Of a DNA stretch of 64,000 bases, positions 455-64,000 are shown one piece after another. Under the pieces are notes generated by a model, which had not been told where the DNA came from, did no database searches, and worked only from the letters and a program-made list of their open reading frames with translations. How positions within the stretch are numbered: the stretch's first letter is position 1; each line of letters opens with the position of its first letter. Both the position numbers and the translations under genes were made by a program. The stretch is from Mobula hypostoma (lineage: Eukaryota), in assembly GCF_963921235.1 (NCBI RefSeq), contig NC_086129.1, forward strand, positions 5,208,001-5,272,000, read 5' to 3'.

Positions 455-1029
455 CACAAGGTAGGACGAGTCAGTGAATCCATTCCCACATTCAGAGCAC
501 ATGAATGGCTTCTCCCCGGTGTGAATTCGGCAGTGCTTCACAAGGGAGTATGAATCAGTGAATCCCTTCCCACATTCAGAGCAACTGAGCGGTTTCTCCC
601 CAGTGTGAACTGGCAGATGCACCTTCAGATGAGATGACTGAGTGAATCCCTTCCCACATTCAGAGCACATGAATGGCTTCTCCCCAGTGTGAACTCGCTG
701 ATGTTCAATCAGTTGAGACGACTTAGTGAATCCCTTCCCACATCCAGAGCATGAGAATGGCTTCACCCCAGTGTGAACTTGCTAATGCAACTTCAGTTGA
801 GACGACTTAGAGAATCCCTTCCCACATTCAGAGCAGCTGAAATGGTTTCTCCCCAGTGTGAACTCGCTGATGTTCAATCAGTTGAGACGACTTAGTGAAT
901 CCCTTCCCACATCCAGAGCATGAGAATGGCTTCACCCCAGTGTGAACTTGCTAATGCAACTTCAGTTGAGACGACTTAGAGAATCCCTTCCCATATTCAG
1001 AGTAGCTGAATGGTTTCTCCCCAGTGTGA
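455..1029 (-). pseudogene. Orphaned 3' C2H2 fingers of ZNF-A (about 7 fingers, with stops and a frameshift)
   Basis: 84-bp ZF repeats; ORF 386..766; TAG stops near 783 and 952; separated from the ORF by a TAA and a solo LTR. Confidence 0.85.
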
Positions 1030-1033
1030 ACTC

Positions 1034-1775
1034 TGTCATGTACCCGTGACAGTTTAAAATGAACCAGCAGCAACATACCACACCTGGAGTCTGGTTTTGA
1101 TGTTAAAAACCACTCTCTTTATTAGTATCTATTTAATGTGGTAACTTAAGCAAGAATAATCAGAAGTTAGCTGTGTTATGAGTATACATATGTGCAAATA
1201 AAAATCCCAAACTATTTAGCTCGAGGGGGCACAAGGCTTAGAATCTTAAGATGGTCAGGTATCAAAGTTCAGTTCATCCATGGATTAAATGATGTGAAAG
1301 AGAGATACTTGTACCCCAAGGTGAATATCAAAAGAAGGCACTTATGTCGTATTCCACAAATTCCACGGTAGTAATACAGAACAACTATCGCCATAGGTTT
1401 TATCTGTCATCGTTCCAAATCCAATTACGAATCTTCACCAATAGTAGCTTATCACAGGGGGACCATCTTCAAAGGAAACTACCACCCAGGCAAGGATTAA
1501 CACATAGGTAGATTCCACAAGGTTGCCCCAATCACACAACCTGATAGCCACTTACCGGTGTGCTGGGTCGACAGTCAACCCAGCCTTTTGGGCACTCGTA
1601 AGTTCCAAGCAGTCACTGTCTTCCTTCCATTGTCCGACTCCAACTGCGACTGACTGTGTGTGAGTGTGTTTAAATCAAAACAAGCTGCAGAGTCCAAAAG
1701 TTCCACCCCTCTCTCTCTCTAAGACTCAAACTCAGGCACTCTCTCTTAAAATGACAGTCCACGGGGTTCATCACA
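1034..1775 (-). mobile_element. Solo LTR (742 bp) inserted in the ZF array
   Basis: TGT...ACA ends with imperfect inverted termini (TGTCATGTACCCGTG / CACGGGGTTCATCACA); 4-bp TSD ACTC at 1030-1033 and 1776-1779; AATAAA on minus near 1120; related to the LTRs at 33445 and 37545. Confidence 0.85.
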
Positions 1776-1910
1776 ACTCGCTGAAGTTCAATCAGTCGAG
1801 GTGACCGAGCAAATCCCTTCCCACATTCTGACCAAGTGAAATGGCCTCTCCCCAGTGTGAATTCGGCAGTGCCTCACAAGGTGGGATGAGTCAGTGAATC
1901 CCTTCCCACA

Positions 1911-60449: not shown

Positions 60450-61550
60450 GAGGGGGATGGTTGGGTGAGTCTGGGACTTTGTGAAGGAGCCCTAACACCA
60501 TCCTCCTCATTTCCCTTATCCCTTCTCACTCTCCTCCCTCACACTCCACCGCATGTGTCTGTGTGTGTGAGAGAGACCTGTCTGCCCACTTCACCCTCCA
60601 TCAACGATGAGCCCTCTCCCCCAACGCACCCATACTCCCGTGTACACAGCAATCCTCGCGGGCTCAAATTATCCAACAATCTTATGCCCTCATTGCAGCT
60701 TAGCCACGTGTTAAACAGCACATTCTTCCTATTCCTGGCACCTGGCACAAACCACAGTCCAGAGGTCACAGCCCTGGACGAGCTTCCCTTTATCTTAGCA
60801 CCTCACTCCCTGAACTCCCTTTCAGAACCTCGTTACTCTACCATCCCATATCATTGGTACCCACGTGGACCACGACCTTCACTGTTCACCTTCCTTGGGA
60901 ACGCTGACCACTCGACCCGAGATGTCGCGGATGTTAGCACGCAGGAGGCAACATAGCATCCTGGAATCTCATTCTCACCCACAGAACTGTCAGTTCCCTT
61001 AGCTCATGAATCACCTACAAATGCAGCTCACCTCTTCTCTACCCTTCCCTTCTCAGTCTCAGAGCCAGACTAAGTGCCAGAGACCCTATTGCTGTGACTT
61101 TCGTTTGCTGGGTCATCCCACCGTCCCCAACAGTATCTAAAGTGATTTATATGTTGTTCAGGGGGATTATCACAGGGGCACACTGCACTCTCTGTTTCTC
61201 CCTTTCCCCTTCCTGTCACCCAGTTCCCTGTGCAGCGCACCTTGGTTGCAACTACCTCTCTATCTGTCCTACCTATCACATCTTCAACCTCCCACACGAT
61301 CTGGAGTTCATCCAGTTCCAGCTCCTACTCCTCAATGTGGATTGTTTGGAGCTGCAGCTGGATGCCCTTCTCACAGGTGTAGTTATCAGGGACACAGGAG
61401 GGCCCCCTGCCTTCCCACATCCCATAAGAGGAGCTTTCCACTATCCTGCCTGGCATCTCTACTGTTCTACCTGAGCAAATGTTCAGATAAAAATTCTAGT
61501 TCCATCATGATTTTGCCTTTTCTGACTGAATTCTCTCCTCACTGAAACCT
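60450..61550 (-). mobile_element. CR1 5'UTR/ORF1 remnant
   Basis: Paralog of 15540-16620 and 30960-32070. Confidence 0.75.
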
Positions 61551-62044
61551 CAAAGAGGTAAAGTCTCAACGTCTCCACTCCAACTCTGCCCTCTCCAACA
61601 CTGGCCGCTCCATTTGCTCCTGCCTGACTTGATAATCAATCCTGAACGCTGACTGGCCACTGCTGAAAGCTAAAACGTAACCTGCCCTGAACCACTGCCT
61701 TTAATACACGATCGGTGAACCTGAGTGAATTACGTCCTCTCAAGTTTCTGATCTCCCCGATTAACGATGGGTCAAAGCTCAGTAGGGTGAAACAAGGATG
61801 AATGACTGATTGAAACCCATCCCACATTCAGAGCAGGTGGCCGCCCTCACCACAGTGTGAACCTGCCACTGTCTCTGCAGTGTGGATGAGTGTGTGAATG
61901 CCTTCCCACAGTCTGAGCAGGTCAACGTCCTCTCACTGCTGAAAACAGTCTGGTGAGTCGGTAGGTGAGATGTCTGAGTGAATCCCTTCCCACAATCTGA
62001 GCAGTTGAACAGTTTCTCCCCAGTGTGAACTCGCTGAAGTTCAT

Positions 62045-63274
62045 TCAATTGAGATGTCTGAGCGAATCCTTTCCCACATTTAGAACAGGTGAGTGGCATT
62101 CCCCATTGTGAATTTGTTGATGTACTTTAAAGTCTGATAACTGAGTGAATTCTTTCCCACAATCTGAGCAGGTGAACGGTTTCTCCCTAGTGTGAATTTG
62201 GTAGTGCTGCACAAGGTTGGATGACGTGGTGAATCCCTTCCCACATTCAGAGCAGCTGAATGGTTTCTCCCCAGTGTGAACTCTCTGATGTACCTTCAGA
62301 TGAGATGACCGAGTGAATCCTTTCCCACATTCAGAGCATGTGAATGGCCTCTCCCCAGTGTGAACTTGACAGTGCTTCACAAGGGAATATGACTGAGTGA
62401 ATCCCTTCCCACATTCAGAGCAGATGAATGGTTTCTCCCCAGTGTGGACTCGCTGATGTACCTTCAGATGAGATGAGTAAGTGAATCCTTTCCCACATTC
62501 AGAGCAGCTGAATGGTTTCTCCCCAGTGTGAACTCGCTGATGTACCTTCAGCTGAAATGACTGAGTGAATCCTTTCCCACATTCAGAGCACGTGAATGGC
62601 TTCTCCCCACTGTGAATTCGGCAGTGCCTCACAAGGAGGGATGAGTCAGTGAATCCCTTCCCACATTCAGAGCAGGTGAACGGTCTCTTCCCAGTGTGAA
62701 TTTGGGAGTGTTGCACAAGGTTGGATGACTGAGTGAATCCTTTCCCGCATTCAGAGCAGCTGAATGGCTTCTCCCCAGTGTGAACTCGCTGATGTACTTT
62801 CAGTTGAGATGACTGAGTGAATCCTTTCCCACATTCAGAGCAAGTGAACGGCCTCTCCCCAGTGTGAATTCGGTAGTGTTTCACAAGGATTGATGACTGA
62901 GTGAATCCTTTCCCACATTCAGAGCACGTGAATGGCTTCTCCCCAGTATGAATTCGGCAGTGCTTCACAAGAGAGTATGAGTCAGCGAATCCTTTCCCAC
63001 ATTCAGAGCATCTGAATGGCCTCTCCACAGTGTGAACTCGCTGATGTACCTTCAGATTAGATGACTGAGTGAATCCCTTCCCACATTCGGAGCATGTGAA
63101 TGGCTTCTCCCCAGTGTGAATTCGGTAGTGCTTAACAAGGGAGTTTGACCAAGTGAATCCCTTCCCACATTCAGAGCAAGTGAATGGCTTCTCCCCAGTG
63201 TGGACTCGCTGGTGTTTCTGCAGTGTGGATGAGTGAGTGAATCCCTTCCCACAGTCTGAGCAGGTGAACGACAT
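62045..63274 (-). CDS. ZNF-F: tandem C2H2 protein, 14 fingers, no effector domain
   Basis: ATG at 63274 (EK-MSFTC); ends in the frameshift tail [18 protein letters not shown]; exon continues past the window end. Confidence 0.9.
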
Positions 63275-64000
63275 CTTTTCAGTGTGAACTCGCTGGTGTT
63301 CATTCAGCTGAGATGATTGAGTGAAACCTTTCCCACACAGAGCAGGTGAATGGCTTCTCCCCAGTGTGAACTCGCTGGTGTCACTGTGGTGTGGTTGAGT
63401 GTGTGAATGTCTTCCCACCGTCTAAACAGGTTACCGTCCTCTCACTGGTGAATTTTCGGATATATCTTTAGCATCGACGACAGAATGAATTGCTTCCTAC
63501 AGTCAGAACAGGTGGAGCATCTCACTATGGTGTGAACTTGCTGATGTGTCTTCAGGCTGGATAACTGAGTAGATCCCCTCCCTCACACAGAGCAGCTGAA
63601 TGGACAGTCCTCTCCCTACTCTGAACTGACTGGCGTGTCTGCGTGTAGGATGCGAGAGAATCCCTTCCCACACTGGGAGAAGGAGAATGCTATCGCACTG
63701 CGAACAATTTGGCAATTCAGAAAGTCAGGTGTTTGAATCTCTTGTCCAATCAATGCAGTTGAAGAACTAATCTCCAGTGAACAAATGCTGGTGTGTTCTC
63801 AGCTCCCGGTTCCAGTGGATAACACAGAGTTACAACAGAAAACTTCATTTCAGAGACAGAATACATTTCCAGCTAGGATGAGATAATTCTTCGTCTCCAA
63901 GGATTGACAACAGATGTGTTGGTCTTGCAAAGAAAATATTCGGTCACTCCTTAGATATCCGGACAGAGAGACAAAACTGACATGTTGAGATTCCCATGCA

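What the first reader, a model, noticed from the sequence alone, without database searches (positions are those of the whole stretch)
455..64000. Birth-and-death array of effector-less tandem ZNF genes with a different DNA-contact fingerprint in each copy
Seen: six same-strand paralogous units share promoter, intron TEs and exon flanks, yet their arrays differ in length (16, 11+, 0, 20, 2, 14). Variation concentrates at helix positions -1/2/3/6 (DSYS, WSSD, RSCH, QLSS, YSSH) while the [13 protein letters not shown] scaffold is nearly fixed. No KRAB, SCAN or BTB domain is visible. Established: tetrapod KRAB-ZNF and cyprinid FiNZ-ZNF clusters diversify this way to repress TEs. Inference: this is a chondrichthyan analogue that works without an attached repressor domain, by steric blocking or through a partner protein.
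Basis: partly seen in the sequence, partly recalled or inferred. Interest (0 to 1): 0.75.

Follow-up and report, generated by a model that had tools for sequence, protein, structure and literature searches.

The report
Tandem headless zinc-finger gene cluster
This stretch of a cartilaginous-fish genome holds six to seven tandem copies of a zinc-finger DNA-binding gene with no known repressor domain: two intact, two shortened and the rest dead, which is the ordinary way such gene families evolve, and nothing yet shows what they bind.

Summary
The minus strand carries six paralogous C2H2 zinc-finger units plus an orphan tail.

- **State of the copies:** D (20 fingers) and F (14) are intact. A (16) ends at a stop codon. 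B (11) is cut by a repeat insertion. C has lost its array. E has four stops and no promoter block.
- **Variation:** amino-acid variability peaks at helix positions -1, +3 and +6.
- **Effector domains:** Pfam finds only transposon domains and decayed fingers in all 337 gene-strand ORFs outside the arrays. There is no KRAB, SCAN or BTB.
- **New here:** every open reading frame starts at an ATG inside a finger linker. It lies just 3' of a frameshift shared by five copies and about 500 bp of decayed fingers, so the "head" was lost before the copies multiplied.
- **Selection:** scaffold codons since then show dN/dS about 0.3, which indicates constraint. Contact codons show about 0.9-1.4, with intervals that include 1. 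Positive selection is therefore not shown.
- **Not tested:** expression, targets and transposon repression. No RNA data were reachable.

Shark and skate RefSeq zinc-finger models look the same, and this scan noted similar clusters elsewhere in this genome. The verdict is a new member of a known kind, of modest interest.

The parts
450..1044 (-). A0: orphan fragment of about 5-7 finger units with a stop and a frameshift, followed by the shared 3' flank (3-454). Probably the tail of a seventh, otherwise deleted unit.
   Evidence: The spacer 1044-1775 matches intergenic DNA downstream of D.
1911..3275 (-). Gene A open reading frame, 454 aa: Met-Pro-Phe-Thr followed by 16 intact fingers. It ends at a GAA>TAA stop in finger 17 (1836-1919).
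3276..3790 (-). About 500 bp of decayed fingers (about 6 units) upstream of the start codon of A, with stops and frameshifts shared by the other copies. Equivalent stretches: 19139-19650, 41261-41780, 52592-53110, 63275-63790.
11300..11720 (-). Promoter-like CpG block and putative non-coding leader exon of A. It has GCGCATGCG motifs (about 11647-11694), CCAAT (about 11668-11672), GCCGCCATTT (about 11416-11424) and a fully conserved GT donor (exon end about 11345).
   Evidence: Promoter and exon status are inferred, not shown.
17960..18130 (-). Repeat insertion that cuts finger 12 of B. About 3.5 further fingers and the family's terminal finger follow at about 17650-17960.
18065..19138 (-). Gene B open reading frame, 357 aa: 11 intact fingers (18203-19126), then read-through into the insertion.
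27031..27429 (-). Promoter-like block and leader of B.
32230..32830 (-). Unit C: the array is deleted, and the decayed 5' fingers are joined directly to the 3' decayed part. No promoter block.
39527..41260 (-). Gene D open reading frame, 577 aa: 20 fingers (39569-41248) and no lesion. The ORF ends in a frameshifted linker shared with E and F, and decayed fingers follow at 39262-39568.
46203..46602 (-). Promoter-like block and leader of D, copy 1.
47436..47820 (-). Promoter-like block and leader of D, copy 2. It belongs to a 1.2-kb tandem duplication that is 90.8% identical.
51992..52579 (-). Unit E pseudogene: 7 finger units with 4 in-frame stops and lost ligand residues. No promoter block.
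   Evidence: Scaffold pN/pS is 0.76 against the other copies.
62045..63274 (-). Gene F open reading frame, 409 aa: 14 fingers (62087-63262) and no lesion. Its upstream region runs off the window.

Best explanation
This is a tandem, lineage-specific cluster of Krueppel-type C2H2 poly-zinc-finger genes evolving by birth and death.

**How the cluster grew.** Segments of about 7-15 kb were duplicated head to tail. Each holds a 3' flank, one large finger exon, a 5' flank, a transposon-filled intron, and a CpG-rich promoter-like block with a short leader.

**How the arrays changed.** The 84-bp periodic arrays gained and lost fingers by unequal exchange. They also accumulated substitutions, mostly at the base-contacting helix residues.

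**State of the copies.** D and F are intact. A and B are shortened but keep open frames of 16 and 11 fingers. C, E and the A0 fragment are dead.

**What is encoded.** The common ancestor had already lost the reading frame of about six 5' fingers. The surviving frames therefore begin at an ATG inside a finger linker and encode bare finger arrays with no recognisable effector domain.

**What is shown and what is inferred.**
- Shown: the anatomy, the lesions, the absence of known domains, and constraint on scaffold codons.
- Inferred: the proteins are made and act as sequence-specific DNA binders with fast-changing specificity. Their targets (transposons or other sites) and any repressive mechanism are unknown.
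For: **Arrays and lesions.**

**Colinear unit structure.** Flanks are 84-95% identical between units.

**Array remodelling.** Recent internal finger duplications include D5/D7 at 98%, D6/D8 at 96% and A7/A11 at 95%.

**Shared 5' end.** A 2-bp deletion, upstream stops and the linker ATG are shared by A, B, D, E and F. The start context has A at -3.

**Domains.** Only C2H2 families hit the ORFs. Only transposon domains and decayed fingers hit 337 other gene-strand ORFs.

**Constraint after duplication.** Scaffold pN/pS is 0.26-0.34 overall and 0.19-0.45 in each pairing of copies. Bootstrap intervals are 0.18-0.51. Synonymous divergence of about 0.13-0.17 is at the upper end of, or slightly above, the flank divergence of about 0.05-0.16.

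**Contrast with the dead copy.** E shows scaffold pN/pS of 0.76.

**Open frames unlikely by chance.** Under neutral substitution alone, D would stay open with probability 0.02-0.06 and F with 0.06-0.15.

**Contact residues.** They carry 3-4.5 times more nonsynonymous change per site than the scaffold.
Against: - **No transcript evidence.** The only runs found behave like low-coverage DNA, and no spliced joint was seen.
- **No matching public protein.** None of the seven candidate ORF products tried is in the protein collection, so the genes may be annotated differently, or not as coding at all.
- **Upstream ATGs.** If the 5' UTR includes the decayed fingers, 3-5 upstream ATGs precede the start.
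- **Uncertain finger orthology.** Orthology between arrays was assigned by similarity and colinearity. Gene conversion from functional paralogues elsewhere could mimic constraint.
- **Damaged copies.** A and B carry a premature stop or an insertion and may be on the way out.
- **Promoter and leader.** These are inferred from motifs and conservation only.
Confidence: 0.7

Rival explanations
1. One reading: these are the cartilaginous-fish counterpart of KRAB-ZNF and FiNZ-ZNF genes. They would be transposon-surveillance repressors under an arms race that silence without an attached effector, either by steric blocking or through a partner protein.
For: - Birth-and-death dynamics and copy-specific contact residues.
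- Contact-site point estimates of dN/dS at or above 1 in most pairings.
- No known effector domain.
- Across metazoans, ZNF numbers track retroelement numbers, and FiNZ-ZNFs repress LTR elements (PMC10547256, read).
- KRAB families are reported absent from cartilaginous fishes (PMC8455134).
Against: - No target, binding or expression data of any kind.
- Contact dN/dS intervals include 1.
- Much of the helix variability reflects two old finger classes rather than recent change.
- The transposons in the units are ordinary intron filler and say nothing about targets.
Confidence: 0.2
2. The whole cluster is non-functional. A gene that lost its 5' half by frameshift was then copied as dead DNA. The open frames and low scaffold dN/dS reflect youth and gene conversion from functional family members elsewhere.
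For: - A frameshift shared by five copies and decayed fingers on both sides of every array.
- Two to three copies are clearly dead and two more are damaged.
- No RNA holder was found.
- The ORF products are absent from the public protein collection.
- Upstream ATGs precede the start.
Against: - Scaffold dN/dS is 0.19-0.45 in every pairing, although synonymous divergence is at least as large as the neutral flank divergence.
- The dead copy E, of the same age, has 4 stops in 588 nt, whereas D and F have none in 2856 nt.
- The linker ATG is kept in all five copies that retain it.
Confidence: 0.15
3. The proteins do have an N-terminal module that I could not see. It could be a short lineage-specific exon, like the 28-aa FiNZ domain, or an exon outside the units that is spliced in frame into the finger exon.
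For: - Pfam cannot detect unknown short motifs.
- There are two or three conserved GT donors with small ATG-containing stretches in the promoter block.
- An earlier scan note reports a leader exon shared by hundreds of ZNF genes of this genome (s1-142176).
Against: - In the ORF frame, stops lie 35-48 codons upstream of the ATG in every copy, and no convincing acceptor lies in that interval.
- Frames opened from the leader ATGs hit stops right after either candidate acceptor (my reading).
- Shark RefSeq models also start inside a linker.
Confidence: 0.1

Closest known systems
Tetrapod KRAB zinc-finger gene clusters (for example the human chromosome 19 and mouse clusters)
   Same: - Tandem segmental duplication.
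- One large finger exon with 84-bp periodicity and TGEKP linkers.
- Finger gain and loss, and pseudogenes among live copies.
- Change concentrated at helix positions -1, 2, 3 and 6.
   Different: - No KRAB exon anywhere on the gene strand.
- The reading frame starts inside a finger linker.
- No evidence of TRIM28-type recruitment.
- KRAB families are reported absent from cartilaginous fishes (PMC8455134).
Cyprinid FiNZ-ZNF genes (Wells et al. 2023, PMC10547256)
   Same: An independent, KRAB-less, lineage-specific poly-ZNF expansion arranged in tandem clusters.
   Different: - FiNZ genes carry a conserved 28-aa N-terminal domain, show demonstrated positive selection, are expressed at genome activation, and their knock-down derepresses LTR elements.
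- None of that is shown here.
- The predicted proteins here have only four residues before finger 1.
RefSeq poly-ZNF models of other cartilaginous fishes: 'zinc finger protein 271-like' and '850-like' of Heterodontus francisci (P0376, P0379, P0289), Amblyraja radiata (P0328) and Carcharodon carcharias (P0257)
   Same: - The nearest named relatives I could reach, at 60-64% identity over the arrays.
- Same CSECGKGF...HTGE[KR]PF scaffold.
- P0376 and P0379 also begin with Met just before finger 1, P0379 inside a linker-like motif.
- No Pfam domain outside the fingers except a transposon RT.
   Different: - They come from other species and are not orthologues.
- They are automatic models, some apparently merging several arrays or transposon pieces.
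- None has been studied functionally, as far as I found.
Domain-less C2H2 expansions in coleoid cephalopods (PMC12513265, abstract only)
   Same: Large lineage-specific C2H2 expansions outside the KRAB system.
   Different: A distant lineage. There the expansions are linked by the authors to nervous-system evolution, and no comparison was made here.

Membership tests
Krueppel-type C2H2 poly-zinc-finger proteins | Tandem CX2CX12HX3H fingers joined by TGEKP-like linkers | tested here: met
   There are 61 intact fingers in A, B, D and F. The Cys and His ligands, G5 and F8 are invariant. zf-C2H2 and zf-H2C2_2 hits have E-values from 1e-73 to 1e-167.
KRAB-ZFP | N-terminal KRAB domain (PF01352) encoded by exons upstream of the finger exon | tested here: not met
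   Pfam was run on all 337 minus-strand ORFs of 40 aa or more outside the arrays. Only RVT_1, Exo_endo_phos, GIY-YIG, GDSL lipase, decayed fingers and weak stray hits were found.
KRAB-ZFP | Recruitment of TRIM28/KAP1 and heterochromatin formation at targets | not testable with these tools
   This needs interaction and chromatin assays.
SCAN-ZNF and BTB-ZNF | SCAN (PF02023) or BTB (PF00651) domain | tested here: not met
   The same Pfam scans gave no hit.
FiNZ-ZNF | Conserved 28-aa acidic N-terminal FiNZ sequence; restricted to cyprinids | not tested
   No FiNZ profile or sequence was available from a tool. The predicted proteins have only Met-Pro/Ser-Phe-Thr before finger 1, and the genome is not a cyprinid's according to earlier scan notes.
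Transposon-repressing ZNF arms-race system (functional class) | dN/dS above 1 at DNA-contact residues | tested here: inconclusive
   Contact dN/dS is 0.93-1.37 against pooled dS, with intervals of 0.53-2.28. Against local dS it is 1.6. A parsimony count over all fingers gives 0.85.
Transposon-repressing ZNF arms-race system (functional class) | Expression in embryo or germline, binding to transposons, derepression on loss | not testable with these tools
   No RNA run held the locus. The runs laid on it look like DNA.
Birth-and-death multigene family | Tandem paralogues with intact, damaged and dead members, and variable copy content | tested here: met
   D and F are intact. A has a stop and B an insertion. 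C has lost its array. E has 4 stops and no promoter. A0 is a fragment.

The most novel reading that the evidence does not exclude
Cartilaginous fishes, which lack KRAB, may rely on a large family of head-less poly-zinc-finger proteins. These would be bare arrays translated from a start codon inside a linker and kept under purifying selection. They would act as sequence-specific silencers or insulators of transposons, either by occupancy alone or through a trans-acting partner that recognises the fingers. That would be a third, independent solution beside KRAB and FiNZ.
Probability: 0.15. Interest if true: 0.7.

Novelty: new member of a known kind. Interest (0 to 1): 0.3.

Why it matters
If the head-less arrays are really expressed and bind transposons, they would show how a vertebrate lineage without KRAB polices its repeats, and whether an attached effector is needed at all.

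As it stands, the locus is a clean but ordinary example of zinc-finger cluster dynamics. It shows duplication, finger shuffling, decay, constraint on the scaffold and freedom at contact residues.

It would mainly be useful as a test locus. D and F are intact, and E is an internal neutral control of the same age.

Tried and rejected
**Protein searches that did not reach close relatives**
- Three homologous-protein searches were run: the whole F ORF, the C-terminal tail, and three HCRIH-type fingers. They returned only tetrapod, frog and teleost ZNFs. Ranking by summed score and the word prefilter hide close relatives, so no ray paralogue or its N-terminus could be retrieved.
- The search of protein representatives was likewise dominated by giant ZNFs. 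Naming ten of them gave shark and skate models at 60-64% identity, but no closer relative.
- Exact look-ups of seven candidate ORF products found nothing.

**Expression**
- Both sequencing-run searches listed no run on record as RNA.
- The four runs laid on 41200-47000 gave short contigs at depth 2-9 over unique intron and promoter DNA, very high depth over repeats, and no GT..AG joint. They behave like low-coverage DNA. Expression is therefore untested, not refuted.

**Other attempts**
- Rfam at gathering thresholds found nothing in the window.
- The search of earlier findings by sequence with the promoter block was blank.
- Literature searches found no study of elasmobranch ZNF clusters.

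**Readings rejected**
- Positional orthology of fingers (finger i with finger i). Finger classes differ at the same index, so I used reciprocal best hits and colinear finger-level alignment instead.
- An in-frame ATG just after the upstream stop. It is ACG or ACT in B, D and F.
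Full report
**What is in the window**

A six-frame scan for the C2H2 pattern finds 78 matches. All but one are on the minus strand, and they are grouped in blocks. Walking each array in 84-nt steps gives the following.
- A, 1920-3263: 16 intact fingers. The 17th carries a single GAA>TAA change.
- B, 18203-19126: 11 intact fingers. The 12th is cut at 17960-18130 by a ~170-bp repeat that recurs at 15381-15475 and 60277-60372. About 3.5 more fingers follow it, including the family's terminal finger.
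- D, 39569-41248: 20 fingers without a lesion.
- F, 62087-63262: 14 fingers without a lesion.
- E, 51992-52579: 7 finger units with four in-frame stops and lost ligand residues.
- C, about 32.2-32.8 kb: no array. The decayed fingers that precede the array in the other copies are joined directly to the part that follows it.

The fingers at 450-1044 contain a stop and a frameshift. A 730-bp piece separates them from A, and that piece matches intergenic DNA downstream of D. I therefore read them as the tail of a seventh, mostly deleted unit. E, however, has seven recognisable units.

**Anatomy of a unit**

Self-comparison shows colinear units of about 7-15 kb:
- A, about 450-16100
- B, 16123-31530
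- C, 31532-38400
- D, 38400-51540
- E, 51540-61000
- F, from 61008 to beyond the window

Identity between copies is 84-95% in the 3' flank, 86-96% in the 5' flank and 85-95% in the decayed 5' fingers. Neutral divergence is therefore about 0.05-0.16.

A CpG-rich block lies several kb upstream of the finger exon in A (11300-11720), B (27031-27429) and twice in D (46203-46602 and 47436-47820). It carries GCGCATGCG motifs, a CCAAT box, GCCGCCATTT, and GT donor sites that sit in runs of 22-28 invariant columns.

I infer that this block is the promoter plus a short non-coding leader.

The block is missing from the dead copies C and E. In E a 31-bp GC-rich minisatellite lies in the former intron.

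The DNA between leader and finger exon is mostly LINE debris, and only part of it is shared between units.

**The reading frames have no head**

All copies that keep the region (A, B, D, E, F) share three features:
- an ATG inside the linker before finger 1 (…K-M-P/S-F-T-C…);
- immediately upstream, a finger whose Cys knuckle is 2 bp short, which shifts the frame;
- further upstream, about 500 bp of decayed fingers with stops at the same places.

The 5' part of the ancestral frame was therefore lost before the units multiplied. This agrees with another first-reader note on this window (s1-144991).

Further details:
- In the ORF frame, stops lie 35-48 codons above the ATG, and I see no convincing acceptor in that interval.
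- The start context has A at -3.
- Three to five upstream ATGs lie in the 520 nt above the start.
- At the 3' end, D, E and F share a frameshifted linker after the terminal finger, followed by more decayed fingers.
- The predicted products of A, B, D and F (454, 357, 577 and 409 aa) match only C2H2-type Pfam families.

**Search for an effector**

I translated every minus-strand stop-to-stop ORF of 40 aa or more outside the arrays (337 in all) and scanned them against Pfam in three batches.
- The clear hits were RVT_1, Exo_endo_phos, GIY-YIG, GDSL-type lipase and decayed fingers.
- A few weak stray hits appeared, with E-values of 0.002-0.008.
- There was no KRAB, SCAN or BTB.
- Large plus-strand ORFs are reverse transcriptases too.

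This excludes known domains but not a short lineage-specific exon. The FiNZ domain of cyprinids is only 28 aa (PMC10547256).

**Where the variation lies, and what selection has done**

*Variability.* Over 61 intact fingers, entropy is highest at +3 (2.9 bits), -1 (2.7), +6 (2.6) and +5 (2.1). The residue after the first His scores 1.8 and +2 scores 1.6. Entropy is zero at the ligands, G5 and F8.

Part of this variability reflects two finger classes that alternate in the arrays:
- [12 protein letters not shown]
- D-S-Y-S-L-V-K/R-H-C/Y-R-I-H

*Orthology.* Fingers are not positional orthologues. Arrays differ through internal duplications such as D5/D7 (98%), D6/D8 (96%), A6/A10 and A7/A11. I paired fingers between copies in two ways: by reciprocal best hit and by colinear finger-level alignment.

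*Results of the pairings.*

| Codon class | pN | pN/pS |
|---|---|---|
| Scaffold and linker | about 0.05 | 0.26-0.29 |
| Other helix | about 0.07 | 0.60-0.67 |
| Contact (-1, 2, 3, 6) | 0.18-0.19 | about 1.6 against local pS; about 1.2 against pooled pS (0.157) |

*Independent pair sets.* Three phylogenetically independent sets of pairs gave these values:
- Contact dN/dS of 1.29, 1.37 and 0.93, with bootstrap intervals of 0.53-2.28.
- Scaffold dN/dS of 0.31-0.32, with intervals of 0.18-0.51.
- Fisher p between 7.9e-9 and 3.5e-4 for contact against scaffold nonsynonymous density.

*Further checks.*
- Scaffold constraint holds in each pairing, at 0.19-0.45.
- It is weak for the dead copy E, at 0.76.
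- A parsimony count on a tree of all fingers gives 0.24 for the scaffold and 0.85 for contact sites.
- Neutral substitution alone would leave D open with probability 0.02-0.06 and F with 0.06-0.15.

*Conclusion.* The arrays stayed under purifying selection after the head was lost, so they are or recently were translated. Contact residues evolve at about the neutral rate or somewhat faster, and positive selection is not demonstrated.

**Expression**

Neither search for sequencing runs listed a run on record as RNA. The four best holders were laid on 41200-47000. They gave short contigs at depth 2-9 with no mismatches over unique intron and promoter DNA, huge depth over repeats, and no canonical splice joint. 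They behave like low-coverage genomic DNA. Expression is therefore untested.

**Relatives and literature**

The word-indexed protein searches did not surface close relatives. The exhaustive HMMER search was dominated by giant ZNFs. Ten of them were named, and they include:
- horn shark 'zinc finger protein 271-like' and '850-like';
- a thorny skate 271-like model;
- a white shark model.

All are at 60-64% identity. Two horn-shark models begin with Met directly before finger 1, one of them inside a linker-like motif. The non-finger stretches of these models have no Pfam domain except a transposon RT. Head-less, effector-less arrays are thus the usual look of annotated ZNFs in cartilaginous fishes.

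From the literature:
- The whale-shark genome paper reports KRAB families as absent from cartilaginous fishes (PMC8455134).
- Wells et al. show that ZNF numbers track retroelements across metazoans, and they characterise FiNZ-ZNFs (PMC10547256).
- I found no study of elasmobranch ZNF clusters.

First readers of this scan flagged similar KRAB-less clusters on other pieces of this genome (s1-142677 and s1-143424). Earlier notes call the genome a devil ray or stingray. I did not verify that.

**Verdict**

The best-supported account is an ordinary birth-and-death cluster of C2H2 poly-ZNF genes. Its live members encode bare finger arrays that are constrained in their scaffold and free at their contact residues.

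The rivals stand as follows:
- That the genes police transposons without an effector is possible but wholly untested (about 0.2).
- That the cluster is dead DNA kept tidy by gene conversion is less likely, given the constraint and the contrast with E (about 0.15).
- A hidden short N-terminal exon remains possible (about 0.1).

The locus is a new member of a known kind. Its one uncommon feature, selection on arrays that lost their head before duplicating, appears to be shared with other cartilaginous-fish ZNF models.

Noticed in passing
window 45494-47927: The promoter-like block of unit D is tandemly duplicated (45494-46708 and 46705-47927, 90.8% identical). D therefore has two candidate leaders.
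   Followed up: partly
window 54748-55969: A GC-rich minisatellite of about 40 copies of a 31-bp unit (GC up to 0.74). It lies in the former intron of the dead unit E, which lacks the promoter block.
   Followed up: no
window 5982-6552 and 22724-23291: A 570-bp segment that is 93.5% identical but inverted between the introns of units A and B. It lies within a rearranged LINE-rich stretch.
   Followed up: no
window 17960-18130 (also 15381-15475 and 60277-60372): A short interspersed repeat whose insertion cuts finger 12 of gene B. Other copies lie in the intergenic parts of units A and E.
   Followed up: partly
window 14024-14270: Another first-reader note (s1-143948) sees a Penelope foldback with a hammerhead ribozyme here. 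Rfam cmscan of the whole window at gathering thresholds returned no family at all. A GIY-YIG hit among nearby ORFs fits Penelope-type elements.
   Followed up: partly
all arrays, e.g. window 39569-41248: Two finger classes alternate. One has Gln after the first His (…L-K-V-H-Q-R-V-H). The other has Cys or Tyr there (…L-V-K/R-H-C/Y-R-I-H). An extra Cys next to a zinc ligand occurs in 20 of 61 fingers, which is unusual.
   Followed up: no
window 33600-37560: An AT-rich (GC 0.32-0.35) 4-kb stretch between units C and D, with plus-strand reverse-transcriptase ORFs. It is probably a LINE insertion specific to this spacer.
   Followed up: no
window 5417-5875: A minus-strand ATG ORF of 152 aa in a block shared by A, B and D, with no Pfam match. 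It is broken into two pieces in D, so it is probably transposon-derived and not an exon.
   Followed up: partly
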